Shown here: positions 1,649 to 57,512 of the stretch, piece by piece | Layout: each line of letters begins with the position of its first letter | How positions within the stretch are numbered: position 1 is the stretch's first letter | Origin: Octopus sinensis | Lineage: Eukaryota | NCBI RefSeq assembly: GCF_006345805.1 | Contig: NC_043003.1 | Location: 51,336,001 to 51,400,000 of the forward strand | DNA length: 64,000 nucleotides | Reading direction: 5' to 3' | Notes under the pieces: generated by a model | The model's database searches: none | Seen by the model: only the letters and a program-made list of their open reading frames with translations | Told to the model about the DNA's origin: nothing | Made by a program: the position numbers and the translations under genes

Positions 1649-4600
1649 GCCGACTACGGCTGCTATAATGGTACGATTATAATTGTAACGGCAATGATGG
1701 CCGTCTCCACACGAGCCAATCAAAGCTAAAAAATGATAACATTATCGTAGCACCAAAATGTTTTTGGAAACTAAAAGGAAAACTAAATTAGTATACCAAA
1801 TCGCTTGTCCTATGGTTAATCTGGAAGCGCGTCCCCCAGGGAAGAGCCAGCCTGGGATCGAAAAGTCATCAACTGGCACAAACTCTTCTCCGAATACGGA
1901 CATGGATGGTCACTTGAACGGGAAATCCCCCAACTTGAGCCCTCCAAGTTCACCACCACAACCACCACAGAAAGAAAAATGTAAGCGGAACAAATGGACC
2001 CGAGAAGAGTATAAAGAAGTAATATACGCTTATTACTATGCATTAGGTAGGCCATCTCAAGAGAGACACACCGCAAACTCTTACAGTATATGGAGAACAC
2101 GGAATCAAGACAGTAGGCCCTATTTGGACGAGAACAAATTAGCAAATGTGAGGAGGGATATCTTTAGAAATAACAGACTCACAGACAGTGAAATAAGCGC
2201 GATCAAGCACGCAACGGAAAATGACATAAATATAAGACACAAAGGAAATGAAGAATCAGATGAACAGTATAGCCCGCCACGAGGCTTAATTGAAAGACTG
2301 CCATCTTGACCAAAGTACGCAAAGGCCTGAAGATACAAGAAATTCTATTGTACCTGTTAAAGATAGCCAGGAAAACGAAAAAACGACAGTAACTGAAGAT
2401 CTCGCATTTGCTGAAGAACACAGAGAGTCTATAGCAGAAATGAGGCAGAAAATCCTGAATACGCTTGAAGTTGTAAGACATACAAGTATGAATGATAGAG
2501 AACCGCTTCATAAACTCTCAAATACAAACCAAAATAAAAAACAAATCCAAATTGGCAACTATGTAACAAATGAAATAATACGAGAATTAAAACCTGATTT
2601 TACTGAGTTAAATGAAATTATTTACGCTTCTGCTAGGGCAATTGAAACCAGCTGTATGCCCCCGAAAAAACAAAGAAAACAAAACCCGGGAAGAAATCAA
2701 ACCTGGAGAAGTAAAATTGAAAAAGAGATTGAATTTATGAGAGGGGAAATATCAATATTAAATGAACTAATATGTGGAAATGATGTAAGATCCAGAACAG
2801 GAAGAAAGATGAAGAGAAAATTTGGATCCTCACCAGAGAAGAACTGATATCAATAAAAGAAACGCTGAAACAAAAAGTCCAAGCAAAAGCCCAAAGAATA
2901 CGAAGATTTGAGAAGAGAAACAAGTTTTACAAGCAAAATAAGCTGTTCACATCCAATGCCAAAAAATTCTACAGAGAAATAGGGAAGGAGAAAGTAACCA
3001 TGGAAGAAGTTCAAAACTTTTGGAAAAGGATTTGGAGTGACAAGACGTACAACATAAATGCAGACTGGATTATACAAACTGAAGGATCCTACCAAAATTT
3101 ACAACAACAAGCATGGGAAGACATCACAATAGCAGACCTAAGAAAGGCACTCACGAAGGCCCATAATTGGAAATCCCCCGGTAAAGATAGGGTGCCGAAT
3201 TTCTGGCTCGCATCGCTCCCGTGCGCACACGGTAAGCTAGTTCAGCTGCTCAATGGAATTATGAGAGACCCAAAGAAAACACCTGAACGGTTAGCAAGTG
3301 GCATTACTTACCTACTCCCAAAGAATAACGAAACCAACCTTCCAAAAAGCTATCGGCCTATAACCTGTCTATCCACCACGTATAAAATCCTAACATCTAT
3401 CCTGGCGGAGAAAACATATGCATTCATGGAGAAGAACGATATTTTCCCCATTGAACAAAAAGGGTGCCGCCGAGGCTCTTACGGATGCAAAGATCAACTG
3501 CTAATCAATCGTATGATCCTTGAGAACTGTCACAACAAGCGCAGAAATCTCAGCACCGCATGGATTGACTATAAAAAGGCCTTCGACAGTATACCGCATC
3601 CATGGATCTTGAGATCGCTGGACATCAAAATTTCCCCTGTGATTTCAAACTTCCTGAAGCACAATATGTCGTTGTGGAATACGAATCTCCAATTATACCA
3701 CTCTAATGGAGTACTTGCCTCAGAAAATATAAACATCAACTGTGGAATTTTTCAAGGTGACTCACTTTCACCTTTAATATTCTGCATAGCCCTAATACCC
3801 CTTACAAGTGAATTAAACAGAACAGGGTATGGGTATAAAATTGCCAATAAAAAAATAAGCCATCTATTTTATATGGATGACTTAAAACTTTATGGTAAAG
3901 ACAATAATGAACTTGAAGGCCTATTGCGCACCGTGAAATCATTCAGCGATGACATCGGGATGGAGTTTGGACTTGAGAAGTGTGCCAAGGCCACTTTCCA
4001 GAAAGGGAAAGTGAAGACCACAAATTCAGTCGTGTTAGATGTTGACACAGTCATAAGAGAGCTTGAGCAAGAACAAACATACAAATATTTAGGGATAAAT
4101 GAAGGCTCTGGTATTCAGCATGCAAGCATGAAAGAGAAAATCAGGAAGGAATGTTATAGGAGAGTTCGTGCAGTCCTGAAATCTGAACTAAATGCACGTA
4201 ACAAGGTGTTAGCTATAAATTCCCTAGCAGTTCCAGTTGTTACTTATAGCTACAATGTGTTGAACTGGAATATGAGTGAAGTAAAGAATATAGATAGAAA
4301 AATACGCAAGCTGCTGAGTTGTAATAGGATGCACCACCCAAAGGCAGACGTAGATCACCTTTACCTTCCCAGAGCCCAAGGAGGTCGAGGCCTGATCCAA
4401 TTTGAACTAGCTTACAAAACAACCACAATTGGACTGGCCAAATATCTCGAAATATCGAATGACTGGATGCTAAAGCTCGTGGAAAATCACGAGAGACGAA
4501 AGAAGCTTCATTCTATCATCAAGGAAAGCAAAAAATTTGCTATTGATCTCGTGCAGGATACCCAAACTGAACAACCCGAGGGAAGTACGGCAACTATTGT

Positions 4601-5622
4601 TGCAAAGAAGGTGAAAATGATGGCAATGAAAAAAGCGCACGAGCAATTGGCTGATAGGTGGGAGGAGAAACCTCTGCACGGCAAATATGTGACCCGCAGC
4701 AAACAAGCTGATGTTGACCAGAAGCAAACCCATCAGTGGCTGCGGAGCTCAGGGCTAAAAGCAGAGAGCGAAGGTTTCATCCTGGCTGCTCAAGACCAAA
4801 GCCTATCAACCCGGAACTACCAGGCCAATGTGATGAAAAATGGAGCAGACCCAAAATGCCGATTCTGCAACGACATGATTGAAACAGTGGACCACCTAAT
4901 CTCTGGATGTAAAGTCTTAGCACCAGTGGAGTATAAATTAAGACATGACAGAGTTGGCCAATATCTCCACTGGCTAATAAGTCGGCATTACAATATCAAA
5001 ACTGCCGACAAGTGGTATAATCACCACCCTGAGGCTGTAACTGAAGGAGAAAACGTAACCATTCTGTGGGACTTTCCAGTACATACAGACCGAACCATCA
5101 AGGCCAATAAACCAGATATTGTTGTGAAAGACCAAAACAATAAAGTTTGCTTATTGATCGACATGAGCATCCCCTGTGATCATAATATCTCAGCGAAAGA
5201 GTTTGACAAGCTCAGAAAATATAAAGACCTACTCATTGAAATTGAGAAAATGTGACATCTCAAGGCGGTTACAATACCAGTGATCGTAGGAGCACTAGGA
5301 ATGATCAAGAAGGGAACCGAAAATTATATGAGAATGATCCCTGGCTTACCATCCCTGCAAGAAGTGCAAAAGATTGTCTTAACTGGTACATCACACGTAT
5401 TGAGAAGAGCATTGTCGATGTGAGAACTGTTGCTGCTCATGCATTTTAATTTAACTTTAAAAAAAAAAAAAAAAAAAAATGAACGAACTACTGAGTTTGG
5501 TTTAATGGCCTACCAATATACACTATGAGTTTCTTTGCCCTAGGAGTCGGGAAGACACTCGGCAAGAAATGGAAGAAAATTTGAAAGAAGAAGAAAAAAA
5601 AGTAATAATAATAATAATAATA
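1649..5622 (+). mobile_element. R4/Dong-clade non-LTR retrotransposon (RT + CCHC + restriction-like endonuclease), near full length, inactivated
   Basis: Single ORF broken into 1758-2309, 2290-2847, ~2850-5255 and 5256-5423. RT motif LFYMDDLKLY, zinc knuckle CRFCNDMIETVDHLISGC, RLE motif KPDIVV..CLLIDMSIP. TAA repeats at both ends (1641-1648, 5602-5622). Confidence 0.92.
3000..5423 (+). pseudogene. RT-RLE polyprotein of the R4/Dong element; premature TGA at 5253-5255 (likely from TGG)
   Basis: The frame continues after the stop as HLKAVTIPVIVGALG...VLRRALSM to TGA at 5421-5423, a typical R4 C-terminus. Confidence 0.88.
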
Positions 5623-7704: not shown

Positions 7705-9490
7705 GATACTGATGTGAGGGAAACGAACGAAGTTGACTCCCAACACAAAATCGCAGACATAACCTTCACTGCCACCGACATCGTAGCAGCAATAAATGAG
7801 GTCAAACATTACTCTGCTGTAGGCCCTGATAGATTTCCCGCTAGTCTCCTGAAGAAATGTAGATATCAACTTGCAGCCCCTCTAACCAACCTCTGGAGAA
7901 ACTCGTTAGACGCAGGTTATATACCGAAACAGTTTCTATCCCAGTCGGTCATCCCGGTTTTCAAACAGGGAAACAGATCCCTCGCAGTCAACTATCGCCC
8001 AATCTCACTCACCTCCCACATCATTAAAGTGTTTGAAAGAGTGTTAAGATCAAGGATAGCTGACTTCCTGGAGACCCACAAACTCCTAAATTCAATCAGC
8101 ATGGCTTTCGCTGTGGCAGGGACTGTCTAACACAGCTCTTACACCACATTGAAGATGTACTCAAAGCCTTGGGAACAGGTTCGAACTCTGACGTCATATA
8201 TCTTGACTTCAGTAAAGCGTTCGACAGGGTAGACCATAACATCCTACTCTCAAAATTGGCAAACGTTGGAATCCGTGGAAAAGTTCTACACTGGATTCAG
8301 TATTTCCTGGCGAATAGAACACAACATGTTGTAGTTGATGGAGTCCACTAAAACCCAGCAAAAGTCACCAGCGGTGTTCCCCAGGGAACTGTTTTGGGTC
8401 CGCTACTCTTCATAATTTACTTAAACGACCTTTCCAGTGTCGTACATCACTGCAAAGTGAAAATATTCGCTGATAACACTAAGCACCAGCAAATCGTCAA
8501 TGAAGAAGCAGACCGAACTCAACTCCAGTCTGATCTATATGCTGTGAGTCAATGGGCAGACAGAAACAAAATGCAACTGAATGAGGGAAAATTTGAGCTG
8601 ATGCATTTTGGAAGAAATTCCTCACTAAAACAACCATACTCTCTTCCTTCAGGGGAACCGCTCACAGCCTCTAACAATATCAGAAACCTGGGTGTAATTG
8701 TTGATGACGATCTCAGTTGGAGTGCACACATCAACAAGAAGGTCGATATAGCTCGTAGGATGAGTTCCTGGATCTTAAGAACTTTCCGGTCCAGAGAACA
8801 AGGTGTCATCATACCACTTTTTTCCTCCTTTGTACGGCCACACCTTGAATACTGCTGCCCACTGTGGTCTCCTCACACAAGACAAAACATCTCCAGAATT
8901 GAGTCACCCCAGAGGGCTCTCACTAAACAAATTGAAGGCATGGCTGCTCTCGATTATTGGGATCGCCTTAAAGCCTTGAAACTTTACTCCCTCCAGCGTC
9001 GCCGTGAGCGGTACATCATTTGTACGATGTGGAAAATATACCGCCAACTTTGCCCAAACGACCTAAACATTAGCTTCAAGGTTCATCCAAGACTTGGACC
9101 ACGGGCTATACGTCCCCTGCCAAATTCAAGATCACAACATACATGTACACTGCAACAAAATGTCTTTTCCTCAACAGGCCCTGCCCTATTTAACATTGTC
9201 CCGAGGGAGATCAAAGAGGAAAAGGATCTCATCAACTTCAAACAGAGTCTGGATAGATTCCTTCAAAGAATACCAGATAAGCCACCCATAATTGGATACA
9301 ACTCACCCAACAAGAACTCACTACTTGAACAAAACTGGATACAACTCACCCAACAAGAACTCACTACTTGAACAAAACTTGACTTAAACAGGATTCGAAT
9401 AATCCTATCAGGTGGTGCTATTAAGTTAGACATGGCCTGGACCAATCTCTGGTCGAAACATATCTAAGTTTATCTAAGTTTATCTAAGTT
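7705..9490 (+). mobile_element. 5'-truncated CR1/L2(jockey-like) LINE, RT domain, degenerate
   Basis: NYRPISLTS, YLDFSKAFDRV, SGVPQGTVLGPLLF, FADN (for FADD); frameshift/stop at ~8095 and 8349. 3' stem-loop GACCA-ATCTC-TGGTC, (TATCTAAGTT)3 tail; 43-bp tandem duplication at 9294-9379. Confidence 0.92.
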
Positions 9491-9578: not shown

Positions 9579-10101
9579 TTATTCAGGCAAATATTGATAT
9601 AAGTTTACGGTGGGAGATAAGGACTTAACGATAAAACGTGTGCCATTGCATTGTTTTGGGGGAACCAAATTTCTGATGAGCATTATAGGGGCACCAACTT
9701 TAAGTTTCAGAAAGTGTGGTGGTAGTCCGGGGTGCTCAAAGGAATTGAGTACCTCTATTGGATAGTTGATGACGTCCTCTGGGTCAGGAGTTGTATCGAA
9801 AAGACTGATATACATAGACTTCCCCAGGAATGAGTTTTAGCTTTTCATCATTAATATGGTGAACAGTTTTATTCCTCGGGGCCAGTATAGCCTTTTTGCC
9901 AATCCAATCCATATTCTGATAATTAGCTTGTAGATCTGGGAACACTGCATCTCCGAGATCAGAAGGCGTCTTAACAATGGTACAAATGGAATCGATGGCA
10001 ATATTACCATTTTCATCCCCTGGTATTTTGCCTTCGCCAAGTGCAAGGAGGGTGTGAGGAAATGCTGCTGATGTGATATTACGTCGCATATGAGCACGCA
10101 T
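9579..10101 (-). pseudogene. Helitron PIF1-like helicase fragment (frameshifted)
   Basis: [37 protein letters not shown] motifs split across ORFs 9784-10101 and 9579-9815. Confidence 0.88.
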
Positions 10102-13224: not shown

Positions 13225-13581
13225 CCGGACAACAGCGTGATGCTTCGTTTGCCTTTATTGACCTAAGGCTTTTGATACTATTAGCCGCCCACTACTATGG
13301 AATATGGATGCCCTCCTAAGCTTCTTGCCATGCTACGCCAGTTCCATACCGGCAAGCAAGTACGTGTGACATTGGGTGGTGATCAGTCTTACTACTTCAA
13401 CTTTCAAGTTGGAGTTAAACAAGACTGCGTCCTGGTCCCTGTCCTCTTCAATGTGTTTCTTGTTGCTGTGACCTAACTATCTCGCTACGACCTCAACCCC
13501 GAAGATGGCAATCCCAGTTCGATATTGCCATGATGGCAATCTCTTCAACTTGAGGAGGCTAGAATCACTAAGACTCAGCCC
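13225..13581 (+). mobile_element. Degenerate RTE (BovB-like) LINE RT fragment
   Basis: Frameshifted translation FAFIDL-KAFDTISR..YGCPPKLLAMLRQFH..GVKQDCVLVPVLFNVF..DGNLFNLRRL. Confidence 0.75.
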
Positions 13582-13935
13582 GGATCTTTACCTTTTGACC
13601 AACAGACTAAAAAAATTTTTTTGTAACTAAACACTTTCAAACTTCGTATACTGGTAGAATGTGTCACATAAAACATCTTTTACTCTTGGCGTTGTTGAGA
13701 AAATTCTGTATTTTGGAAGTTATTTCTTGTTAAAGTTGTATTTCGGTAATTTCAACCAATCAATGACATGTATTCAGTTGAATAAAATTACTGCCGTTGT
13801 TTGTCAACAACTATCGGCGGTGTATATTTCATTTGTCACTGTTATTTATGACATATTCTATAAGTATACGAAGTTTGAAAGTATTTAGTTACAAAAAATT
13901 ATTTTTTAAATCTGTCGGTCAAAAGGTAAATATCA
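13582..13935. mobile_element. MITE with ~70-bp imperfect TIRs
   Basis: GGATCTTTACCTTTTGACC..TTCAAACTTCGTATACT mirrored at 13862-13935; internal homology to 15726-16166. Confidence 0.75.
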
Positions 13936-14644
13936 GGACTGAATCTTTGTTAGTGATTTTAGTCTCCTCAAGTTGGACCAGAAGGCTGCAATTGGTTGGG
14001 TTGCATATTGGCGCGCAATAGAGCAAGAGACAAATTGCGCCAATACCAACCAATCAGAGTAGTGGACACAACAGGGTCTAAAAAGATCACCGAAGGCTAG
14101 CTGTTATCTACTACGTCCGTATTTATGTATATATAACAGAGAGAGAGTAGATTTTCCCTTAAGTCGTACGCTACAAATTTATCACTAGCTGGTGATTAAT
14201 ACACGTTGAGGATGGGTATCCACCTAGAAATTCGAGTCCGTGTGTCTCACGTAAGGCTAGGGATGGGAGCAAATACTAATCGGACACAGAAGGTGTGCCA
14301 TATTGTTATGTTTTAATACAGAATTATCCATGTGAAAACTCGTTCAGCCCGTCTAACTCGTCCGGCAATGATAGAGTGAATATGTGAACAATATATACTT
14401 AAAAATGCATGTTGATTAAAGCAGAACCCAAAACTCCACGTGCAAAACAAAGCAGTATGCAAATTAGAACTATTATTTGTACAAATTAACAAAATACAAA
14501 TACATTTACTAAACAAGGTAAAAGTCACCAAACTCAGTTCGATACCTAGTCAGAACTGAATTAGAGCAATATAACACACACACACAGACACATATATATA
14601 TATATATACATACATATATATATATATATGCATATATATTCGTT

Positions 14645-14904: not shown

Positions 14905-14945
<41 letters not shown>

Positions 14946-15405
14946 TAAATAAGCGTAGAAATTGATATTAATCAATTAAAACCAGTGGCTTAGCATATTT
15001 TTTTTAAAATCCGAAGATTAAAAATTGTTTTACATACAAAATTTAGAGGACTGACCACTAAAAGTGGACAGCCTATATGCTAAACATAGACATCAAATCG
15101 CCATTACCACGAAGAATGTGTTCTCAAGAAAAATCTCAGAAAAAAAAACAAAATGTAAAAAGAAGCAAGACAAATGAAAATATACGAAATAAAAAAAATG
15201 ATTACCTATGTACCATTGGTTTCACGTGTTTGTATTTACGTGTATGGACATGCAAACATCTGCATGGTAGTTACCGATCTCAGCGTGCCAAAGTGATGAC
15301 ATTTGAAAGATACACTTAAATATAATTTGTAGAACTTTATACATGCTGGATTTCGGTTGAGCGTTCTGTATCTAGTTCTGGAAATTATGTTTTGTAGACG
15401 ACAGA

Positions 15406-15479
15406 CTATGCTGATGATCTTGCAGATGTTTGCGTGTTCATACACGTAAATATTAACAAGTGAAACCAATGGTACATAG
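15406..15479 (+). ncRNA. Type I hammerhead ribozyme (predicted)
   Basis: CTATG-CTGATGA-T-CTTG..hairpin..CAAG-T-GAAA-CCA-A-TGG-TA|CATAG: stem I 5 bp, canonical core, GUA cleavage triplet at 15472-15474. Confidence 0.85.
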
Positions 15480-15725
15480 GTAATTGTTTATTATTTCGTA
15501 TATTTTCATTTGTCTTGCTTATTTTTACATTTTTTTTTTCTTGCTGAGATTTTTCTTGAGAACACATTCTTTGTGGTAATGGCGATTTGACGTCTATGTT
15601 TAGCATGTAGGCTGTCCACTTTTAGTGGTCAGTCCTCTAAATTTTGTATCAAAACAATTTTTAATCTTCGGATTTAAAAAAAAAATATGCTAAGCCACTG
15701 GTTTTAATTGATTAATATCAATTTC

Positions 15726-16166
15726 GGATCTTTTCGGTTTGAACGGCAGTTTTTTAAAATAATTTCCACGTAACTAAACACTTTTAAACTTCGTATACTG
15801 GTAGAATGTGTTTATAAAACATCTTTTTCTCTTGGCTTTATTGAGAAAATTCTATAGTTTGTAAGATATTTGTTGTTGTTTTTTCTTCAATTTCTGCAAA
15901 TTCAACCAATCAATGACGTCTATTGAGGTAAAAAACAATCTGTACCGTATGAATATGTCCCTCATTTAAGAAACAGATTGGGTTTATTTACATTTCTGAA
16001 GAAAAAAAGATACTCTTCCCACCACCCTTAACCATAACCCTAACCCTAACTCTAACCCTAACCCTAAAACAGATTGAAATGCAATAGATCAATACTAGGA
16101 TCATAATTATGGGTGACAATTTCCTGACACCGCAAGAAAAAACTGCCGGTCAAATCGAAAAGAGCC
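15726..16166. mobile_element. MITE, 30-bp TIRs, 8-bp TSD, internal (CCCTAA)n
   Basis: TIR GG(A/C)TCTTTTCG(G/A)TTTGA(A/C)CGGCAGTTTTTT; TSD TCAATTTC at 15718-15725 and 16167-16174. Confidence 0.88.
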
Positions 16167-17185
16167 TCAATTTCTATCTACCCTTATTCAATTTTAAATT
16201 TTAAAATGTTCTCTAACCGGTAAATTGACTGCTGTAGTTTATTAACTGCAGGGTAGTTTCCGATCTCAGCGTGCCAAAGTGAAGACATTTGAAAGATACA
16301 CTTAAATATAATTTGTAGAACTTTATACATACAGATCCATCTGCAAAATGAGCATTATTTATAATTCAATGGTACAACACTGTAAGAGTTTGCTTTGAGA
16401 TATACTTAGATTTACCCTGTTTGACAACTATTGGAAATAAACAAACATAGGAGTCCCTACATGGTCCCTACTAGAAATAGCAGCCACATATCACACTACT
16501 ATCTTAAAATAAAGGCAGGACACATTGGTTAAAATAGACCTATGTATGGTATACCCAAAGATATGTCATGAGCGGAAATGCCTGTGATCGTAGGCTGATC
16601 TGAGGCTAAACACCTCCTATAACAACCATCAAAAGCATTTCTTACCATTTGCTGTTGTTGTTTACCCCAAGATTAGCCACGATCTGCTAACCTATGATAA
16701 AAGATATTTTAACCATGACCATCCCAGGCTACATAATCCTATGTCTTTTTTGTTTTCAATGGCAGTGTGTGAGTTTAGAGAAAATATCAGGTTATGTGAA
16801 CACGATGTTGTTTATGATCAGGCGGTCCTATTGTTAAAGACATTATGTCAAGACTTTTTTAGATGTAGAAATGTCATATTTTATGTCTTTTCTTTGCTTT
16901 GTTTAGCCAAGTAGGTGCAGACGTGACACATCAACACATGCGTTCCAACTATAATCACCCCTCTTTTTATCTTATTCTACACAAGGTATCTGGGAAAACA
17001 TTTCTCAATGTGCCTTTCTTTTTAAGACGATAGAGTGTGATTTGACGAAGAGCAGCCAAACACCGCCACCACCACCAAATTGTCACACAGAAGACCGTTA
17101 CTAAGTCTACATTGTAGAGTTGTGAATACAACCAACAACTTCAAAAGACAGATATATATTTGCATAGCAAGTATTTTTATCTCTA

Positions 17186-20150: not shown

Positions 20151-21540
20151 TCAGCCATTTAATTTGGGGGAGAACTTAGCTATGAAATGTTTTTCCATAT
20201 TCCTCCTGAAGGGGGTGTCGTTCTTCGGACACTTGTAGAAGGTAAATATCTTAAATTTTCCTTCTCCACATGTAGCTAGGTGTGTGCTTAGTGGTATTTT
20301 GCGTAGTTCTTCCTGCCGAATATGTTGTCGGTGGATCCTGGCTCGCTGGCACAAAGAATTACCAGTTTCACCTACGTAATTCTCCTTGCACGTGGGGCAG
20401 GTTATGCAGTATATGACGTTCTGCGTCTTGCAGTTCATATCTGCATTTACTTTGAATATGACACCATTTTTAAATCTTATCTCTCTGTTGCTCTCTATGT
20501 ATTTGTAGGTGGGGTTGCTGCAGGTCCCACATCTACATCTCCGCACTCTTTTGCAAAGAATTCCGTTTTAGTTTCTGAAGAGAATTTCGCTCTTGTTAGG
20601 TGTTTTTTTAGGTTTTTGTCCTGTCGTCTACTGTTTTTTATGCTATATTTGTTTAATATGTTTTTCATTTTGGGGCTCTGTAAGGCTATTGGTAGGTTTG
20701 AATGTATGGTTTGGAAGATGTTGGTAACTCCAGGGTTGTGTGTGTTTATAAAAGGGATAGTGTTTTCTTTGTTTTTTGTTTTGGGTGTCCTGAGTTGTGT
20801 GATGTCTAGTTTTAATGCTCTTGTGATTCCATTTTCTATTAGCTTAAGGGGGTATTTTTGCTCTAGGAGGAAGCTTTTGAGTTCATCTAGTCTTATTAAT
20901 CGTATTTGTGAATCAGTTACTATGCTACATATTCGTCGTGCCATACTATATGGGATGTTTCTTTTTGTGTGGGATGGGTGGCAGGAGTGGAAATTTAAGT
21001 ATTGATGTGTGTCAGTTTTTTTGTAGTGGATGTCTGTTGTGACGATGGAGTTGTGTATTTTGATGTTGATGTCTAGGAAGGGAAGTTCGTTGTGGCTGGT
21101 ATCTATTGTGAAATTGATAGATGGGTGCAGCGTATTGAGGATGTTGTGGAATGTTTGTAGGTCCTCTTCTGATCTGTTCCAAAAGATGAAACAGTCATCG
21201 AGGTAGCGTTTCCACTTTTTCTTGATGTCTTCTCTGAAGTCGTGTTCGAAGACTTTCCCTATTTCGTCATATAGTTTTTTCTCCAGGAAGCCCATCACCA
21301 GGTTGGCATATGAAGGTGCGAATTTTGTACCCATAGCCGTCCCTTTTATCTGTCGGTAGTATTAGTTGGGTGGCTTGGGTGATAAAGTTTGTCTTGAAGC
21401 GTTCGTCTATAAGTTCTCTGTATTTTTCTATTGATTGTTTTATAGCTTCTAGACCTAGGGTGTGTGGTATGTTTGTGTATAGATTTGTGACATCAAAGCT
21501 TGCAACTATAGTGTTTTTCGGGACTGTATTTGGAATCTTA
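20151..21540 (-). pseudogene. Penelope-type reverse transcriptase + GIY-YIG endonuclease (truncated, frameshifted)
   Basis: ORFs 20495-21334 and 20151-20546 plus an upstream motif-A segment to 21540. Confidence 0.9.
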
Positions 21541-26255: not shown

Positions 26256-26352
26256 TATATATATATATATATATGTATATATATACTAGCTGAAGGTGAC
26301 CCGCTCTACGCGCGGGTAAGAGTGTGGTTGTTACTTTCTGTTGCTTCCTTTC

Positions 26353-26666
26353 AGCACGTAAAAAGCACCATCCGAACGTGGCGGATTGCAGCGCCGCCTT
26401 GACTGGCTTCTGTGCTGGTGGCACGTAAAAAGCAACAACCGATCGTGGCTGCTGCCAGCCCCCCTGGCACCTGTGCAGGCGGCACGAAAAAAGCACCCAG
26501 TACCGACACAGAGTGGTTGGCGTTAGGAAGGACATCCACCTGTCGAAACACTGCTAGATCAGACTGGAGCCTGGTGCAGCCTCCTGGCTTTCCAGACCCC
26601 TGTCAAACTGTCCAACACGTCTAGCACGGAAAACGGACGTTAAACGATGATGATGATGATGATGAT
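26353..26666 (+). mobile_element. Family D retroposon nested in Helitron H2
   Basis: GGCACG(T/A)AAAAAGCA repeats, RTE-like tail, (GAT)n; same insertion at 38355-38667. Confidence 0.75.
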
Positions 26667-27351
26667 TCTCCCTCTTTGTTTCTTTCTCCTTTCTCTCTCA
26701 CTTTCCCACTCTCTTACTCTTACTTTCTCTGGGACTCTCCCTCGCTTTCTCTTACTCTCTATCTTTATGTATCTCTCCCATTTATAAACAACAAATGATC
26801 TTGAGTAAGTTGAGAAATGAAATATTTAGAAAGATCAATCATAAATATCAGGCAGTAACAACGGAAAGGTCTGCTTCAAGACAGACAGCAAAACACTAAC
26901 TTTAAAAGGGACAGACGAACTTGCGAGCTGAATAAAAATAATAAAATATTGGAAACCAAAGTTTGAAGGGATAGAATTTGAGGATAGTAGAGTCATCATG
27001 GCTGGCATTTCTTAACGACGGACAGCAACGTATTGACAGTTCAACGGCTGGCGTAAAATGTTGAACTTGATGTAAAAGAAAATCCCTAAAAACCAAGTTT
27101 TGAATTGATTCTTTCTCACGACAGTAGACTCACGATGGCAAGCATTCAAAACTTCTTCATCATGGACGGCAACACATTGACGATTAAAAGGCTGGCGCAA
27201 ATTTTTTAGCTTGATGTAACAGAGAATTGCTAAAAACCCGCTCCTTTAAATTTTAATCCCCTTCCAGCCCCATTTAGACCCCTTTTCACATTTTGGTTAA
27301 TATAACCCGATTTCATTTGGGTCTACTGGGGCCACATTTTATAAGATGAGG

Positions 27352-27549: not shown

Positions 27550-28772
27550 TTGCAGAATAAATAGAGACGGCGGAGGCGGCAGACGTCGTTGCAATGTAAA
27601 CATGATTTGTTATAAGAGAAAGATTGTCCAGATTGTGTGTTGGTGGTGGTGGTGGTGGCGATGATAATTATCTTTAAGAATGGAGATAAAGAGAAATTGA
27701 ATGGGAGTTAGAGGTAGAAAGAGAAGGTGTAAATTTTGGAGTGAATCCGACGGGATGTAGTGGGCTTTAACCCCGGCAAAAAAAATAATATCTGTTGCGT
27801 TTCTGAAGTAGGAATATTGAAACTTTTGCGGATGTCATTGATAGACTCGTTGTAGAATAAATAGAGACGGCGAAAAAAGAGAGAGCTCGAGAAAGAAAAG
27901 GTGATATATGAAAGGGAGGACGGGAAAATGAAATATTTTGCAATGTAAACATGATTTGTTTCAAGAGAAAGATTGTCATGATTGTGTGTTGGTGGTGTTG
28001 GTGGTGGCGATGATAAATATCATTAGGAAAAAGAGTGAGTGAGTGAGGAAGACATACATAAGTTGTGGCGATGATAATTGTAGACCCCTTTTCACAGTTT
28101 GATGAAGAGAACCCGATTTCATTCGGGTGTACTGGGGCCACATATAGGTGTGTGTGTGTGTGTGTGTGTGTGTGCACGCTGTATAAATTAAATTAGAGAT
28201 CAAACCACTAAAAGTGAGTAAAACAGTAAAAAAAACGCAAACATAAAAATAAAAATATAATATTAGATATATGTATATATGTGGTGTGTGTGTGGGGGTG
28301 TGTGTGTGTGTGTGGTTGACAGGTAGACAAAAGAATGCGATGGCGATGGGGATGGCGATGTATAATTTTGTTACTGTCCATGAACGCTGATAGATACATG
28401 AGTAAAATGTATAGGAAGGTAAGAGATAAGAGCGAGTGAAAATGTTCTTGGAAGAGAGTAAATAGCGACAGACAGAGTGATTTGAGGAAGACTTTACATT
28501 AAATAACGGTAGTGCATTGTCAAATGAAGAGGAGTGACAGAGAGTACTGGAGGAATAGGGTGAGGTAGGAAGATGGCCCCTAGCAACCACACCTTTTAAG
28601 ATAGGGATTCTAAGGTAGCCCACGCGCATCGTCACCTCATTCTGCATGCCCTGTAAATTTGGAGCGAATCGGACGGGATGTAGTGGCATTGAAAGCGAAC
28701 CAAGCGGTAAAAACGCATTTCAGTTTTATATATAGAGAAGATATATAAATATATATATAAATATATATATAA

Positions 28773-28840
<68 letters not shown>

Positions 28841-29291
28841 TGTTGACAGGTAGAAAAAAGAATGCGATGGCGATGGGGATGGCGATGTAATATTGTTACT
28901 GTCCATGAACGCTGATAGATACATGAGTAAAATGTATAGGAAGGTAAGAGATAAGAGCGAGTGAAAATGTTCTTGGAAGAGAGTAAATAGCGACAGAGTG
29001 ATTTGAGGAAGACTTTACATTAAATACGGTAGTTGCATTGTCAAATGAAGAGGAGTGACAGAGTACTGGAGGAAATAGGGTGAGGTAGGAAGATGGCCCC
29101 TAGCAACCACACCTTTTAAGATAGGGATTTCTAAGGTAGCCCACGCGCATCGTCACCTCATTCTGCATGTCCCTGTAAATTTGGAGCGAATCGGACGGGA
29201 TGTAGTGGCATTGAAAGCGAACCAAGCGGTAAAAACGCATTTCAGTTTTATATAGAGAAGATATTAAATATATATATAAATATATATATAA

Positions 29292-29325
<34 letters not shown>

Positions 29326-29327
29326 GG

Positions 29328-30089
29328 GTGTGTGTGTTGTGGTGTGTGTTTGTGTGTGTGTGTGGTGTGTGTGGTGTGGCTGTGTGTTGTGTGTGTGTGT
29401 GTGTCTGGTGTGATCCAGGGGTTCCTCAGGAAAATGGATCACCTACCCCGGTGAATGACCAAGTAGTGAAGGATAGGGGAGCCAAGGGAGCAGAAACCGG
29501 AAGCCCCCCTGTACCAGTGGTCCTACGAAGAAATAAAAAATTAGAAAAATTAGAAAAACAGAAGAAAAAAGGAAGAACCGAAAGCAAAAATAAGGAGGGA
29601 AAAGGCAAAACAACCAAAGCTGAAACCCCAACCCACCACACAAACAGCAGAGAACCCCATGGAGGATCCAATGCCACCCAGTACACTTCAGGAAAGAAGA
29701 AATCTGGAAGGCACCGAAGAACCTGTAAGTTCTACCTGCGGGGCAAATGTTGGCATGGTGAGGACGGCAAAAACTGCCGGTTCGCCCAGCCGACACCCCG
29801 CCAGAACTTCAGGGGACTCAAAGAGAAAAAGTTTACCGAGGGAACACAAGAAATGTCTCCCAGGAAAACTTTCAAAAGCGAAGTGCGCTCCTCAGATGTT
29901 CTGCGCAACGCAGCAGCTGAGCAAGAGTCTTTTTTATGCATGGCGGAAAGAATTGTCCGGCAGCTAACCTGGCTACACCAAGCACAGAGAAGGAACCCTG
30001 CCCACCACTATGCAAGACCACCACAGTCAACAGACACGGGATGGCCTCCCCTAACGCCTGCACAGCCGTCACCCCAATACTTTTACTAA
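29328..30089 (+). pseudogene. LINE ORF1, Lys-rich with degenerate CCCH zinc finger
   Basis: CKFYLRGKCWHGEDGKNCRFAQ = C-x7-C-x8-C-x3-(H>Q). Confidence 0.65.
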
Positions 30090-33032
30090 ATATTGGGGGC
30101 CTGTTGCATCAAAATAGAAACAACATTTCTTTCCTGAGAGATCTTACTGCATGCAATCTAGCCCTATGCATAGCACTTGTGGAAATTCACCTCAACCTTG
30201 ATATAGAGGACGCAGAAGTACACATACCAAACTATGCCATACTGCGAACAGACAGAAGGGAAATGAGCCATGGTGGAGTTGCTGTATACATCCGAGATGA
30301 CCTCACACCCCAGGTCTTGATGACATACTCAAATTCGGTATGTGACACCTTAATTGTATACATAAGACAACATAATATAGTCATATGCAATACATATTGC
30401 CCACCGGATGCCCCAAATCACATAGGCAAGTTTGAAGATTGCCTCACAAGAATTAAAGAAATCCTCATGAATCTGGAACACCACGTGACCATATTTCTTA
30501 TGGGTGATTTCAACTTCCCCAACGTCAAATGGCCCGAAGTTCACATACTCTCAGGAATGAATCATTGCAAGCAAGTACAGGTGGAGTCCCTGCTCAATCT
30601 CACCAATGCCTTATTCATGGAGCAAGTTGTACTCAAGCCAACTAGGGCGAATAACATTCTGGATCTCTGCTTCACGAACAATATGGACATCATTCATGAT
30701 GTGAAAGTGACACCGACATCAGTTTCGGATCACAACATAATAGAGCTGTCTATGTTTTGGCCGAAAGTGACCAGAGACATACAGCCTAAAGGAAGCACCC
30801 GAAATCTCTCCAATCTGAACTTCCATAAAGCAGATTGGAAATCGATCCAAAAAGAGATCCTCAGAGAGGACTGGCCGGAATGTCTCTCCACACCAGACAT
30901 TGACATGAAACTAGAATGTTTCATGTCATCTGTGCAAGCCGTATGCCAGAAATATGTCTCAGAGCACAAGGCCAAAACAAATAGGAGCAAGATTCCAAGA
31001 GACAGGAAGATCCTCATGAGACGACGGACGAAGGTTGCAAATCGTCTCAACCAACATCCCAAAAGTAGCGAAACGTCCCGCCTAAAACAACACTGATGGA
31101 GATCGAAAAAAGGCTGCAACAATCCTATGTGAAGGAGAAAGCAGACAAAGAAGCCTGGGTTATAAAAAAACATTAAATCAAACCCAAAGGCCTTCTTTCA
31201 TTACGCGAAAGAAACAGTCTCAGTGCACTACAAGATAGGACCCCTCCTCCAAAAGGATGGCTCCCTCACAGACAGTCCAACTATGATCAGTGAGATGCTG
31301 AATGGCCAGTTCAAAAGTGTCTTTACCACCCCGTTGGAACACAGACAAGTGAACGAACCAGTGGACTTCTTTACCGCCTCACCTATAACCAGCGAGGCAG
31401 TTACAATAGAATGTATTGACATTAACAAAAAGATGTCCTACTAGCCATAGATGAAGTGGACACAAACTCAGCTGCTGGTCCAGACGCTTTCTCAGCCATC
31501 CTCCTCAAAGCGTGTAAGCATGCCTTGGCAAAACCCCTCAAGATTCTCTTCCAGATCTTTCTTGCGAATGGCAAACTGCCAAGCAAGCTGAAGGAGGGAA
31601 TAATATGCCCAATACATAAAGGGGGAAGTAGAGCAGATGCCAAAAACTATAGGCCTATCTCTCTGACTTCAGCAAAGTCATGGAAAGGATAGTCAGAAAG
31701 AGACTAATCGCATTCCTTGAGGAAAATAACTTGCTGAGTAATACCCAGCATGGTTTTCGACCAGGTAGGAGCTGCCTGACCCAGCTCTTACAGCATTATG
31801 ACCGGGTGTTGAGGCAGTTACTCAACAAATCAAATGTGGACGTAATCTACCTTGATTTTGCAAAAGCTTTTGACAAGGTGGATCATGGTATTATATGCCA
31901 TAAACTACGTGACCTTGGCATAGCTGGAAAACTTGGAGTGTGGTTGCATGACTTCCTGAAAGATAGGAGTCATGCAGTAGTGGTTAATGGAGCCACCTCT
32001 ATGAACACACAAATAGTGAGCGGTGTTCCACAGGGCACTGTCTTGGGACCACTGCTTTTTATAGTGGCCCTCTCAAATATGCCCTCAAATGCCCGGATAG
32101 CCACTCTGGCCAGCTATGCAGACGATACGAAAGTCTCGCAGAAAATACAGAACCCCAGCGATGTTGCACACCTGCAGCAGGAGTTGGACTCAATCTACAG
32201 ATGGGCTGAGGATAATAATATGCAGTTTAATGCTGAAAAATTCCAGGCCCTGCGCTACCAGCATCCAAAACTGAATATTAAACTTACAGGATACACCGGT
32301 CCACAGGGAATTTCAATCCCAGAGCCTAAGTCTGTGAGGGACCTGGGTATCGACATGAGTGATGATACCTCTTTCCAAGTGCACATTACCAGGAAGGCGA
32401 CAAAGTGCAGACGACTGGCTGGGTGGATCCTAAGAACATTCAGAACCAGAGATAAGGAAACCATGATGGTCCTCTGGCAGACATTTGTCCTCAGTCGCCT
32501 GGATTACTGCTCACAGCTATGGTCACCCACCAGTGTAAAATTAACAGCAGACCTTGAAGCAATCCAGAGAAGATTCACAAAGAAGATCGTCTCTTTGCAA
32601 CAGCTCAGCTACTGGGAAAGGTTGAAACAGCTGAGACTCTACTCCCTGGAGAGAAGACGGGAGATGTATGCAGTAATATATGTCTGGAAGATCCTGGAAG
32701 GAATTGTGCCAAATTTTGGCATTGTAAGCTACACCAATGCTAGAACGGGACGACACTGCATAGTGCCAAAGATCCCAGCAATGCCATCACGCTTCAGGAC
32801 CAGCTTCTGCAACAGCCTGGGTTTCAAAGGCCCACAGCTTTTTAATATTCTCCCAAAGAGTCTGAGGAACTTGCACAAAGTAGATGTAGCGGTTTTTAAA
32901 TCAAAGCTGGGCATCTTCCTGTCAAGAGTCCCAGATGAACCTACCTCACGGCAAGAGGTGCAAATGAGAGTAGCTGTATCAAACTCCATTCTTCACCAAG
33001 TGCCACATATTAGACGAAGTTCGTCGCAATAA
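29936..33032 (+). pseudogene. LINE ORF2 endonuclease/reverse transcriptase, fragmented
   Basis: ORFs 29936-31096, 31223-31444, 31456-31692, 31680-33032. Confidence 0.9.
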
Positions 33033-37893: not shown

Positions 37894-37959
<66 letters not shown>

Positions 37960-37963
<4 letters not shown>

Positions 37964-38270
37964 ATTAAGGACTGAGCACGAAAAGTGGACAGTCAACATG
38001 CTAGATATAGACGTCAAATCGCCATTCACCACAAAAGATTATGTTCTCAGATCAAACTCAACACAAAACCATAGCAATAAACAAGTGAAAAATATACGAA
38101 ATAAAATAATTACCCATGTACTAAATTAGTTTCAGCTGTTATTTCCCGCAAGGAAAACTGCAGCCATCATCAGCATGGTCCGTTATAAATGTAATTTGCT
38201 GGATTCTTTTTTAATATGCTAGACCACTGGTCTTAATTGATAAATATCAATTTCTACCCTTAATTAATTT
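37960..38270 (-). mobile_element. Second copy of the hammerhead-bearing element family, with short inverted 3'-end copy
   Basis: Homologous to the 14956-16176 arms; plus-strand ..AATATGCTAGACCACTGG..ATCAATTTCTACCC at ~38205-38265. Confidence 0.7.
38114..38178 (-). ncRNA. Type I hammerhead ribozyme (predicted)
   Basis: CCATG-CTGATGA-TG-GCTG-CA..hairpin..AA-CAGC-T-GAAA-CTAA-T-TTAG-TA|CATGG; canonical core, GUA triplet. Confidence 0.85.
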
Positions 38271-39663
38271 TATATATATATATATATACTAGCTGAAGGT
38301 GACCCGCTCTACGCGCGGGTAAGAGTGTGGGTGTTACTTTCTGTTGCTTCCTTTCAGCACGTAAAAAGCACCATCCGAACGTGGCCGATTGCAGCACCGC
38401 CTTGACTTGCTTCTGTGCCGGTGGCACGTAAAAAGCACCAACCGATCGTTGTCACTGCGAGCCCCCCTGGCACCAGTGCCGGTGGCACGAAAAATGCACT
38501 CACTACACTCACAGAGTGGTTGGCGTTAGGAAGGTCATCCACCTGTAGAAACACTGCCAGATCAGAGTGGAGCTTGGTGCAGACTCCTGGCTTCCGAGAC
38601 CCCGGTCACACTGCCCAACCCGTGCTAGCACGGAAAACGGACGTTAAACGATGATGATGATGATGATTCTCCGTATTTGTTTCTCTCTCCTTTCTCTCTC
38701 ACTTTCCCGCTCTCTTACTTTTCTTTTCTCTCGGACTCTCCCTCGCTTTCTCTTACTCTCTATCTTTATCTATCTCTCTCCCATTTATAAACAACAGAAG
38801 ATATTGAGTAAGTTGAGAAATAAAATATTTAGAAAGATCAATCAGAAATATGAGGCAGTGGCAATGGAAAGGTCTGCTTCAAGGCAGACCGCAAAACACT
38901 AACATTTAAAAGGGACAGACGAACTTGCGAGCTGAATAAAAATAATAAAATATTGGAAACCAAAGTTTGAAGGGATAGAATCTGAGGATAGTAAAGTCAC
39001 CATGGCTGGCATTTGTTAACGACGGACAGCAACGTAGTGACAGTTTAACGGCTGGCGTAAAATTTTGATCTTGATGTAAAAGAAAATTCGTAAACACCAA
39101 GTTTTGAAGTGATTCTTTCTCACGACAGTAGACTCACGATGGCAAGCATTCAAAACTTCTTTATCATGGACGGCAACACATTGACGATTAAAAGGCTGGC
39201 GCAAATTTTTTAGCTTGATGTAACAGAGAATTCCTGAACACCCACTCCTTGAAATTTTAATCCCCTTCCAGCCCCATTTAGACCCCTTTTCACATTTTGG
39301 TTAATATAAGCCGATTTCATTCGGGTCTACTGGGGCCACATTTTATAAGATGAGGAATTTTGTTCTAGAGGTGACGCCTTTCATTTGAGGAACAAAATAG
39401 TTGTCATGCAAACTTGTCAGCACCTTTATCATAGGTGTGCATATTTTCAGCTGAATCGACCGACTACGTAATGCACACATTATATATATATGTATATATA
39501 TATATGTGTGTGTGTGTGTGCACGCATTATATATACAAATGTATACAAATGAGATATATATCTGTATAAATTAAATTAGAGATAAAACCACTAATAGGCA
39601 AATCAAACAGTGAAAAACCAAAAACAAAAACATAAAAAAAGAAAATATAACATAGAAAATATA

Positions 39664-57319: not shown

Positions 57320-57512
57320 TGATACCAGTGCCGGTGGCACATAAGAGAACCATCCAAACGTGGCCGTTGCCAGCGCCGCCCCGACTGGCCTCCGTGCTGG
57401 TGGCACATAAAAAGCACCATCCGATTCTGGCTGTTTGCCAGCCTCGTCTGGCACCTGTGCCAGTGGCATGTAAAAAGCACCCATTGCACTCATGGAGTGG
57501 CTGGCGTTAGGA
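57320..57512 (+). mobile_element. Family D retroposon 5' repeat region
   Basis: GTGC(C/T)GGTGGCACAT(A)AAAAGCACC repeats ending GAGTGGCTGGCGTTAGGAAG. Confidence 0.65.

What the first reader, a model, noticed from the sequence alone, without database searches (positions are those of the whole stretch)
15406..15479. Canonical-core hammerhead ribozyme with covarying paralogue at 38114-38178
Seen: both copies fold as type I HHRs with CUGAUGA, GAAA and a GUA triplet. Every stem differs in sequence yet still pairs: stem I CTATG/CATAG vs CCATG/CATGG; stem II CTTG/CAAG vs GCTG/CAGC; stem III CCA-A-TGG vs CTAA-T-TTAG. Both keep a CA/AA internal loop in a long stem II and an unusual U after A9 and before G12. 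Established: HHR core consensus. Inference: covariation indicates selection for self-cleavage in an active non-coding retroelement family, and the CA/AA loop may be the tertiary contact.
Basis: partly seen in the sequence, partly recalled or inferred. Interest (0 to 1): 0.88.

Follow-up and report, generated by a model that had tools for sequence, protein, structure and literature searches.

The report
Penelope-type hammerhead ribozymes in octopus repeats
Two diverged copies of a short non-coding repeat in an octopus genome each carry a real-looking hammerhead self-cleaving RNA motif of the kind already known from Penelope-like retrotransposons, so this is a good but ordinary example, not a new kind of ribozyme.

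Summary
Both have CUGAUGA, GAAA and GUA. They differ by four double compensatory changes in helices I-III, with no disrupted pair.

A structural descriptor finds exactly these two motifs in the window, against 0.025 per random window. Neutral drift would keep the core and pairs about 3 times in 10,000.

The features match the published minimal hammerheads of Penelope-like elements (PLEs):
- short helix I and long helix II;
- an extra nucleotide after A9;
- a small near-palindromic helix III that favours dimers.

The genomic setting also fits PLEs:
- head-to-head inverted copies with a shared 3' end;
- (TA)n microsatellite flanks;
- a third copy that lacks the catalytic 5' half;
- a decayed RT/GIY-YIG PLE 4.7 kb away.

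The host is an octopus.

Nothing shows that the family is active. The copies are old, and one is interrupted by a nested insertion. G10.1-C11.1 is replaced by U.U in copy 1 and G.U in copy 2, so activity may be weak. No further family copies could be retrieved, so covariation rests on two sequences.

Verdict: new member of a known kind.

The parts
15406..15479 (+). Hammerhead copy 1 (type I). Helix I is 5 bp, followed by CUGAUGA. U opposite U lies at the base of helix II. Helix II is 4 bp, then a CA/AA loop, then a 13-bp hairpin. GAAA follows, then helix III (ACC/GGU with an AAU loop) and GUA. The predicted cut is between 15474 and 15475.
   Evidence: (the minimum-free-energy fold is the hammerhead fold, -20.3 kcal/mol, z -3.3)
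38114..38178 (-). Hammerhead copy 2 (type I), on the minus strand. It has a bulged U after A9 and a G10.1.U11.1 wobble, then GCUG/CAGC, a CA/AA loop and a 7-bp hairpin. Helix III is ACUA/UAGU with an AUU loop. The predicted cut is between 38119 and 38118.
   Evidence: (the hammerhead fold, -16.9, equals the minimum free energy)
15206..15264 (-). Third, dead copy. It keeps only the 3' half of the motif (distal helix II, GAAA, helix III, GUA, the 3' strand of helix I). The 5' strand of helix I and CUGAUGA are replaced by unrelated sequence.
   Evidence: (no hammerhead fold, z +0.2)
15345..15725 (+). Right copy of the repeat (R). It holds 61 nt upstream, hammerhead copy 1 and about 245 nt of body. 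Its last ~70 nt continue at 16175-16245, after a nested insertion.
16175..16245 (+). The rest of the 3' end of the right copy, beyond the nested TIR element (the 8-bp duplication TCAATTTC lies at 15718-15725 and 16167-16174).
14943..15344 (-). Left copy of the repeat (L), inverted and joined head to head with R at 15344/15345. It is 93% identical to R from helix II to the 3' end. Its 3' end abuts (AT)n.
37961..38215 (-). Repeat copy carrying hammerhead copy 2. It is about 72-76% identical to R and L over 215-240 nt. It lacks the last ~95 nt of the family's 3' end and abuts (AT)n at 37897-37960.
38190..38271 (+). Inverted fragment holding only the family's 3' end (about 91% identical to the L and R termini). 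It is joined head to head to the copy-2 repeat and is followed by (TA)n.
15260..15344 (+). 85-bp segment repeated directly at 16246-16330 (96.5% identical), so the pair brackets the right copy. Read on the minus strand it is the 5' part of L. It holds a 26-nt block homologous to the region upstream of hammerhead copy 1.
16246..16330 (+). Second copy of the 85-bp direct repeat.

Best explanation
These are Penelope-type (PLE-type) type I hammerhead ribozymes. They are carried on the sense strand of a short (about 0.45-0.55 kb) non-coding repeat family in an octopus genome. That family is most likely a pseudo-LTR fragment or a non-autonomous derivative of a Penelope-like retroelement.

Inferred mechanism: in the element's RNA the motif cuts after GUA (15474|15475 in copy 1, 38119|38118 in copy 2). 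The weak, near-palindromic helix III favours a double hammerhead formed by two motifs, either from two RNAs or from tandem copies. The cut would trim or release unit-length element RNA.

Shown here: the motif, its fold, the compensatory changes, the repeat family and its insertion architecture.

Inferred only: cleavage activity, dimer use, and the link to a PLE reverse transcriptase. The three copies in this window are old relics, not active elements.
For: The motif and its statistics:
- The core and helices are read directly.
- The descriptor gives exactly 2 hits against 0.025 expected.
- There are 4 double compensatory changes and no broken proximal pair, plus one more in a possible outer helix I beyond a conserved C(A/G)GA / GUAA internal loop.
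- Neutral retention of the core and pairs is about 3e-4.
- The hammerhead fold equals the minimum-free-energy fold, or ties with it.
- Predicted homodimers gain about 8-9 kcal/mol through an 8-10 bp helix III.

Match to published PLE hammerheads (PMC4209133):
- helix I of 4-5 bp;
- an enlarged helix II;
- a conserved extra nucleotide between A9 and 10.1;
- a small palindromic helix III;
- families rich in covariation;
- pairs of motifs 100-700 bp apart on opposite strands. Here the remnant at 15206-15264 (-) and the motif at 15406-15479 (+) form such a pair.

Match to PLE insertion structure (PMC8557442: inverted 5'-truncated copy at the 5' end, partial tandems, (TA)n targets):
- Both loci are head-to-head inverted pairs with different 5' end points and one common 3' end next to (TA)n.
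- An 85-bp direct repeat brackets R.

Supporting context:
- A U.U at the base of helix II has a cleaving precedent in axolotl HHR_Amex2 (PMC7229834).
- The host is an octopus: 96% identity to an O. sinensis scaffold and 88% to an O. sinensis protein.
- Octopus genomes carry PLEs, with an expansion at Jukes-Cantor distance about 0.2 (PMC13282606).
- A decayed RT + GIY-YIG PLE lies at 20151-21334 (-) in the window.
- 92 kb of O. sinensis holds two textbook minimal hammerheads, against 0 in 150 random sets. One has the same CUGAUGA-N-GGCUG...CAGCU-GAAA helix II base as copy 2.
Against: - No RT/GIY-YIG ORF is adjacent to either copy. The PLE remnant 4.7 kb away shares no sequence with the repeat and has no hammerhead. 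The PLE link therefore rests on architecture and literature.
- G10.1-C11.1, which is conserved in canonical and PLE hammerheads, is absent: U.U in copy 1 and G.U in copy 2.
- No Rfam hammerhead model matches, even at E <= 10. The same models also miss the textbook octopus minimal hammerheads.
- Only two intact copies are available. They are related, and the alignment was fitted to the structure.
- PLE minimal hammerheads cleave poorly in vitro, and the hammerhead is dispensable for PLE insertion in vitro (PMC4209133; PMC11167929).
- Copy 2's repeat lacks the common 3' end. The left copy is not simply 5'-truncated: it carries a replacement of the hammerhead's 5' half.
Confidence: 0.72

Rival explanations
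1. Monomers or fragments of a metazoan non-LTR retrozyme. This would be a small non-autonomous repeat whose tandem copies are transcribed, self-cleaved by type I hammerheads and ligated into circular RNAs.
For: - The size (about 0.45-0.55 kb), low GC content, non-coding nature, type I hammerhead and long flanking duplication all fit the description in PMC7229834.
- Retrozymes are argued to derive from PLE pseudo-LTRs (bioRxiv 10.64898/2026.07.22.740005), so this overlaps with the best explanation.
Against: - No head-to-tail tandem of hammerhead-bearing units exists at either locus. The arrangement is inverted, and there is only one intact hammerhead per locus.
- These loci therefore cannot release a unit-length RNA.
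- The unit is longer than the 170-400 nt typical of animal retrozymes.
Confidence: 0.15
2. A fold-back or MITE-type DNA transposon whose long hairpin happens to contain hammerhead-like boxes. The motif would have no ribozyme function.
For: - 14958-15725 is a 770-bp palindrome with about 40-nt inverted termini and TA-rich flanks.
- Rfam finds no hammerhead.
- The G10.1-C11.1 pair is missing.
Against: - The catalytic 5' half lies outside the palindrome. It is present in R only, so the hammerhead is not a by-product of the inverted repeat.
- The second locus is not a TIR element: it holds a long copy plus only a ~80-nt 3'-end fragment.
- Variable 5' end points with a constant 3' end indicate reverse transcription.
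- The chance rate of the motif is 0.025 per window, and retention with 4 compensatory changes is about 3e-4 or lower.
Confidence: 0.08
3. A host-domesticated hammerhead that acts in cis on a cellular transcript, for example in mRNA or lncRNA processing, as proposed for the conserved amniote hammerheads.
For: None specific. The only support is that genomic hammerheads can be exapted (established knowledge, cited in PMC7229834).
Against: - Both copies lie in repeat-dense, ORF-poor sequence among LINE, Helitron, PLE and microsatellite DNA.
- The motif is part of a multi-copy repeat.
- One paralogue has lost half of the motif.
Confidence: 0.03

Closest known systems
Minimal/variant type I hammerheads of Penelope-like elements (Cervera & de la Pena 2014, PMC4209133)
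   Same: - Short helix I (5 bp).
- Enlarged helix II.
- A conserved extra nucleotide between A9 and 10.1.
- A small near-palindromic helix III suited to dimers.
- Strong covariation within families.
- Frequent solo or opposite-strand pairs 100-700 bp apart.
- Location in retroelement repeats next to microsatellites.
   Different: - G10.1-C11.1 is replaced by G.U (copy 2) or U.U (copy 1).
- Helix II is much longer (35-52 nt) and has a conserved 2x2 CA/AA internal loop.
- Helix III is a real 3-4 bp stem, as in the D. virilis, rotifer and shrimp variants, rather than absent.
- No RT/GIY-YIG ORF is physically linked here.
Axolotl retrozyme hammerhead HHR_Amex2 (Cervera & de la Pena 2020, PMC7229834)
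   Same: - A type I hammerhead with a U.U mismatch at the base of helix II and a short helix III.
- It cleaves weakly as a monomer and better as a dimer.
- It sits in an AT-rich non-coding repeat.
   Different: The axolotl motif sits in 330-350 bp head-to-tail tandem arrays that yield circular RNAs. Here there is no tandem array, helix II is much longer, and the host is a cephalopod.
Metazoan non-LTR retrozymes (coral, mussel, amphibians)
   Same: A small non-autonomous, low-GC repeat carrying a type I hammerhead, with long target duplications and a proposed PLE origin.
   Different: The defining tandem organisation and circular RNA products are not seen at these loci. The copies are inverted and solitary.
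Rfam Hammerhead_1 (RF00163) and related hammerhead families
   Same: The same catalytic core and the same three-helix junction topology with helix I open.
   Different: Neither copy reaches E <= 10 against any Rfam hammerhead model. The long helix II, the extra U, the missing G10.1-C11.1 and the minimal helix III fall outside those models.

Membership tests
Hammerhead ribozyme, type I | Conserved core: C3 U4 G5 A6 N7 G8 A9, G12 A13 A14, A15.1-U16.1, and H17 not G | tested here: met
   Both copies have CUGAUGA ... GAAA ... U-A.
Hammerhead ribozyme, type I | Three helices around the core, with helix I open (5' and 3' ends) and helices II and III closed | tested here: met
   Descriptor hits show helix I of 5 bp, helix II of 4-5 bp plus a distal hairpin, and helix III of 3-4 bp. 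The minimum-free-energy fold, or an iso-energetic fold, is the hammerhead fold.
Hammerhead ribozyme, type I | G10.1-C11.1 pair closing helix II next to A9 (metal site) | tested here: not met
   Copy 1 has U opposite U. Copy 2 has a bulged U and then a G.U wobble. There is a precedent for U.U in a cleaving hammerhead (PMC7229834).
Hammerhead ribozyme, type I | Match to curated covariance models (Rfam hammerhead families) | tested here: not met
   No hammerhead family matches at gathering score or at E <= 10. As a control, the same models also miss two textbook PLE-type minimal hammerheads in O. sinensis, so this failure carries little weight.
Hammerhead ribozyme, type I | Site-specific Mg2+-dependent self-cleavage 3' of H17 | not testable with these tools
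   This needs in vitro transcription and cleavage assays.
Hammerhead ribozyme, type I | Tertiary contact between helix I and helix II elements | tested here: inconclusive
   The CA/AA loop in helix II and a C(A/G)GA / GUAA loop beyond helix I are conserved in both copies. With only 2-3 related sequences, conservation cannot be told apart from ancestry.
PLE-type hammerhead (Cervera & de la Pena 2014) | Short helix I (4-5 bp), enlarged helix II, extra nucleotide between A9 and 10.1 | tested here: met
   Helix I is 5 bp. Helix II is 4-5 bp, then a loop, then 7-13 bp. A U follows A9 in both copies. The features are as listed in PMC4209133.
PLE-type hammerhead (Cervera & de la Pena 2014) | Palindromic 15.2-16.2 / loop 3 that allows a dimeric double hammerhead | tested here: met
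   ACCAAUGGU and ACUAAUUUAGU are palindromes with one central mismatch. The predicted homodimers form an 8-10 bp helix III and gain 8-9 kcal/mol.
PLE-type hammerhead (Cervera & de la Pena 2014) | Located in the pseudo-LTR of an element encoding RT + GIY-YIG endonuclease | tested here: inconclusive
   No such ORF lies next to either copy. A decayed RT/GIY-YIG PLE lies at 20151-21334 (-) but shares no sequence with the repeat. Most published PLE hammerheads are likewise solo motifs.
PLE-type hammerhead (Cervera & de la Pena 2014) | PLE insertion architecture: an inverted 5'-truncated copy at the 5' end, partial tandem or direct repeats, and microsatellite (TA)n targets | tested here: met
   Both loci are head-to-head inverted pairs with different 5' ends and a common 3' end next to (TA)n. 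An 85-bp direct repeat brackets R. The description is in PMC8557442.
Metazoan non-LTR retrozyme | Head-to-tail tandem repeats (about 170-400 bp), each with a hammerhead | tested here: not met
   Self-comparison shows only inverted pairs and one 85-bp direct repeat without a second hammerhead.
Metazoan non-LTR retrozyme | Expressed as linear and circular unit-length RNAs | not testable with these tools
   No transcriptome data are available here.

The most novel reading that the evidence does not exclude
An octopus-specific, PLE-derived non-coding family may carry a hammerhead variant that has replaced the usual loop 1 / loop 2 tertiary contact. The replacement would be two internal loops: CA/AA four to five pairs into a very long helix II, and C(A/G)GA / GUAA five pairs into an extended helix I. 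The variant would also tolerate a non-Watson-Crick 10.1/11.1 position. If it cleaves efficiently, this would be a new structural solution within the hammerhead class and the first characterised cephalopod ribozyme family.
Probability: 0.12. Interest if true: 0.5.

Novelty: new member of a known kind. Interest (0 to 1): 0.25.

Why it matters
It adds a cephalopod example to the very large set of retroelement-borne hammerheads in animals. The papers searched here contain no description of octopus hammerheads.

It also illustrates two practical points. Curated covariance models (Rfam) miss PLE-type hammerheads altogether. Pairwise compensatory change between old repeat copies can still identify them.

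The specific variant, with no G10.1-C11.1 and a long helix II carrying an internal loop, could be a useful test case for how much the helix II base and the tertiary contacts can vary. It does not open a new question. The biological role of PLE hammerheads is already an acknowledged open problem, and these decayed copies are not a better handle on it than published systems.

Tried and rejected
- Rfam at gathering score over the whole window, and at E <= 10 around both copies: no hammerhead family matched. The control on O. sinensis minimal hammerheads also gave no match. Rfam's silence was therefore judged uninformative.
- Search for further family members outside the window. An exact 19-mer from the conserved body found nothing in viral contigs. 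It found 8 metagenome hits that are bare 19-21 nt chance matches. A hammerhead-shaped gapped pattern in viral contigs gave 3 hits without any helices.
- The window's LINE ORF is not on record in the assembly index.
- Four O. sinensis loci (92 kb) fetched through PIF1-like proteins hold only AT-rich fragments resembling the family's 3' terminus, and no hammerhead-bearing copy.
- MAFFT alignment of the two motifs mis-registers the 5' half and helix II. No covariance model was built, and pairs were counted on a structure-guided segmentation instead.
- The 52-nt CTGATGA...GAAA...TA strings at 9673 (+) and 48666 (-) were rejected as hammerheads. They have no helices and fail the descriptor.
- A link between the repeat and the PLE remnant at 20151-21334 was rejected. 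The only similarity is T-rich low-complexity sequence, and the remnant has no CUGANGA on its sense strand.
- ORFs next to the O. sinensis minimal hammerheads have no Pfam domains.
- A simple '5'-truncated at TGCAG' reading of the left copy was abandoned. A 26-nt block upstream proved homologous to the right copy (1 of 2000 shuffles reached its alignment score).

Full report
**Observation**

I read both sites directly.

- Copy 1, 15406-15479 (+): CTATG-CTGATGA-T-CTTG-CA-[GATGTTTGCGTGT tcat ACACGTAAATATT]-AA-CAAG-T-GAAA-CCAATGG-TA-CATAG.
- Copy 2 is the reverse complement of 38114-38178: CCATG-CTGATGA-T-G-GCTG-CA-[GTTTTCC ttgc GGGAAAT]-AA-CAGC-T-GAAA-CTAATTTAG-TA-CATGG.

Four corrections apply.

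- Copy 2 is on the minus strand.
- The one-nucleotide loops drawn for helix III cannot form. As monomers, helix III is A15.1-U16.1 plus two or three pairs, with a three-nucleotide loop.
- Copy 2 has one more nucleotide (G) after the U. It reads best as a bulged U plus a G10.1.U11.1 wobble, whereas copy 1 has U opposite U.
- A third homologous copy on the minus strand (15206-15264) keeps only the 3' half of the motif.

**Is it more than chance?**

- I wrote a descriptor requiring CUGANGA, a helix II of at least 4 bp with up to two unpaired bases at its 5' side and one at its 3' side, GAAA, an A15.1-U16.1-closed helix III of at least 3 bp, H17 not G, and a helix I of at least 4 bp. It finds exactly these two sites in the 64 kb on both strands. 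It finds a mean of 0.025 sites in 200 first-order Markov random windows.
- The two copies belong to one repeat family (72-76% identity over 215-240 nt), so they are not independent occurrences. Their divergence is what makes them informative.
- On a structure-guided segmentation, the proximal helices differ by four double compensatory changes: one in helix I, two in helix II and one in helix III. None of these pairs is broken. A fifth double change lies in a possible outer extension of helix I.
- I simulated neutral substitution of copy 1 at 25% divergence. The core and all 12 proximal pairs survive in about 3e-4 of trials.
- RNAfold gives the hammerhead fold as the minimum-free-energy structure of copy 1 (-20.3 kcal/mol, z = -3.3). 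For copy 2 the hammerhead fold has the same energy as the minimum-free-energy structure (-16.9).
- Predicted homodimers form double hammerheads with an 8-10 bp helix III and gain 8-9 kcal/mol over two monomers.

Caveat: only two intact sequences are available, and the alignment was fitted to the structure.

**Surroundings**

Locus 1:
- It is a 770-bp palindrome, 14958-15725 (83% overall; 93% from helix II outward).
- It consists of a right copy R (15345-15725, continuing at 16175-16245) and an inverted left copy L (14943-15344), joined head to head at 15344/15345.
- L ends at an (AT)n microsatellite.
- The catalytic 5' half of the hammerhead lies outside the palindrome. It is present only in R.
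- In L that segment is replaced by about 55 nt of unrelated sequence. A 26-nt block further upstream is again homologous between L and R (1 of 2000 shuffles reached its alignment score).
- R is interrupted by a nested 441-bp element with 24-bp terminal inverted repeats and an 8-bp duplication, TCAATTTC (15726-16166).
- R is bracketed by an 85-bp direct repeat (15260-15344 and 16246-16330, 96.5% identical).

Locus 2:
- It has the same logic. A long copy on the minus strand (37961-38215) carries hammerhead copy 2.
- That copy is joined head to head to a fragment of about 80 nt that holds only the family's 3' end (38190-38271, +).
- Both sides abut (AT)n.

Different 5' end points with one common 3' end next to a microsatellite indicate reverse transcription rather than cut-and-paste transposition. 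The hammerhead is on the element's sense strand.

**Host and genomic context**

- Window 34229-37127 is 96% identical to an Octopus sinensis scaffold. A PIF1-like ORF is 88% identical to an O. sinensis protein.
- The window is dense in transposons: LINE RT/APE ORFs, a Helitron-like PIF1 region, and a decayed canonical Penelope-like element. The PLE has an RT with YLDD at 20495-21334 (-) and a GIY-YIG domain at 20151-20546 (-).
- That PLE remnant shares no sequence with the hammerhead repeat and has no hammerhead core on its sense strand.

**Comparison with what is known**

Cervera and de la Pena (PMC4209133) described the hammerheads of Penelope-like elements. Their listed features are:
- an enlarged helix II;
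- a conserved unpaired nucleotide between A9 and 10.1;
- a conserved G10.1-C11.1;
- a palindromic 15.2-16.2 or small palindromic helix III that implies dimeric action;
- extreme within-genome variability, full of compensatory changes;
- mostly solo motifs, sometimes two motifs 100-700 bp apart on opposite strands;
- low cleavage in vitro.

Craig et al. (PMC8557442) describe PLE insertions as partial tandems that often have an inverted 5'-truncated copy at the 5' end. They also note a bias for (TA)n microsatellites.

Both descriptions fit these loci point for point, with two exceptions. G10.1-C11.1 is replaced by G.U or U.U, and no RT/GIY-YIG ORF is physically linked.

The U.U at the base of helix II has a cleaving precedent in axolotl HHR_Amex2 (PMC7229834).

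Octopus genomes contain PLEs, with an expansion at Jukes-Cantor distance about 0.2 (PMC13282606). That is compatible with the roughly 25-28% pairwise divergence seen here.

In 92 kb of O. sinensis DNA I found no hammerhead-bearing member of this family. I did find two textbook PLE-type minimal hammerheads, against none in 150 random 92-kb sequences. One of them, L012 6702-6747, has the same CUGAUGA-N-GGCUG...CAGCU-GAAA helix II base as copy 2. This supports the bulged-nucleotide plus G10.1.U11.1 reading.

**Rfam**

No hammerhead family matches, either at gathering score or at E <= 10. The same models also miss the two O. sinensis minimal hammerheads. This failure therefore says more about the models than about the motif.

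**Mechanism**

- Shown: a conserved hammerhead core and three-helix junction, maintained by compensatory change, on the sense strand of a retroelement-like repeat.
- Inferred: in element RNA the motif cuts 3' of GUA. Helix III is weak and near-palindromic, so efficient cutting probably needs two motifs pairing through helix III, either in trans or in tandem transcripts. This is as proposed for PLE and amphibian hammerheads.
- The function of such cleavage in PLE biology is unresolved. Hammerhead mutants do not affect PLE insertion in vitro (PMC11167929).
- Copy 1, which lacks G10.1, is likely weaker than copy 2. The left copy is dead.
- The conserved CA/AA loop in helix II and the C(A/G)GA / GUAA loop beyond helix I are placed where tertiary contacts would be expected. 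The data cannot separate function from ancestry.

**What is not supported**

- There is no evidence that the family is 'active'. The copies are diverged, one is interrupted and one is truncated.
- There is no tandem arrangement that would make these loci retrozymes able to release circles.

**Verdict**

The feature is a new (cephalopod) member of the known class of Penelope-type hammerhead ribozymes in retroelement relics. Interest is modest.

Noticed in passing
window 15726-16166 (related copies at 13546-13975): A nested 441-bp element sits inside the right repeat copy. It has 24-bp terminal inverted repeats (GGATCTTTTCGGTTTGAACGGCAG / GGCTCTTTTCGATTTGACCGGCAG) and an 8-bp duplication, TCAATTTC. 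It contains an interstitial CCCTAA telomere-like run at about 16020-16068. A related, itself palindromic copy lies at 13546-13975.
   Followed up: partly
window 20151-21334 (-): A decayed canonical Penelope-like element. The RT fragment carries the YLDD motif and is followed, in another frame with several stops, by a GIY-YIG endonuclease domain (Pfam E = 2.6e-7). No hammerhead core was found on its sense strand.
   Followed up: partly
window 34229-37127 (-): A Helitron-like PIF1 helicase region that is 96% identical to the Octopus sinensis scaffold VCDQ01003854.1. This identifies the host as an octopus.
   Followed up: partly
window 9673-9724 (+) and 48666-48717 (-): Identical 52-nt strings with CTGATGA...GAAA...TA on opposite strands. 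They are copies of some other repeat. They have no hammerhead helices and fail the descriptor.
   Followed up: partly
window 37300-37961 vs 28106-29322; 38271-39200 vs 26268-27196: Both flanks of the copy-2 locus are 90-92% identical to segments elsewhere in the window, and all of them end at (AT)n runs. (AT)n microsatellites appear to be shared insertion hot spots for several repeat families. No clean empty site could be reconstructed.
   Followed up: no
L012 6702-6747 (-), L014 13005-13087 (-), L012 23129-23212 (-) (Octopus sinensis): Three further hammerhead candidates lie in 92 kb of O. sinensis. Two are textbook PLE-type minimal hammerheads; one is about 60 nt upstream of an (AT)n run and the other follows an (AAT)n/(AAC)n run. 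The third is a looser one with a 46-nt helix II loop. No Pfam-recognisable ORFs lie next to them, and Rfam misses the two that were tested (the minimal hammerheads at L012 6702-6747 and L014 13005-13087).
   Followed up: partly
window 3000-5255 (+), 8394-9371 (+), 29936-33032 (+): LINE-type ORFs (RVT_1, and an APE endonuclease followed by RT). The 751-aa ORF has its best database relatives at only 66% identity, none of them labelled as octopus. Labelled relatives are from shrimps and a coral.
   Followed up: no
window 38357-38533, 57343-57514, 26354-26497: Short SINE-like repeats with an internal duplicated 'GGTGGCACGTAAAAAGCACC' unit lie next to the copy-2 locus and elsewhere in the window.
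   Followed up: no
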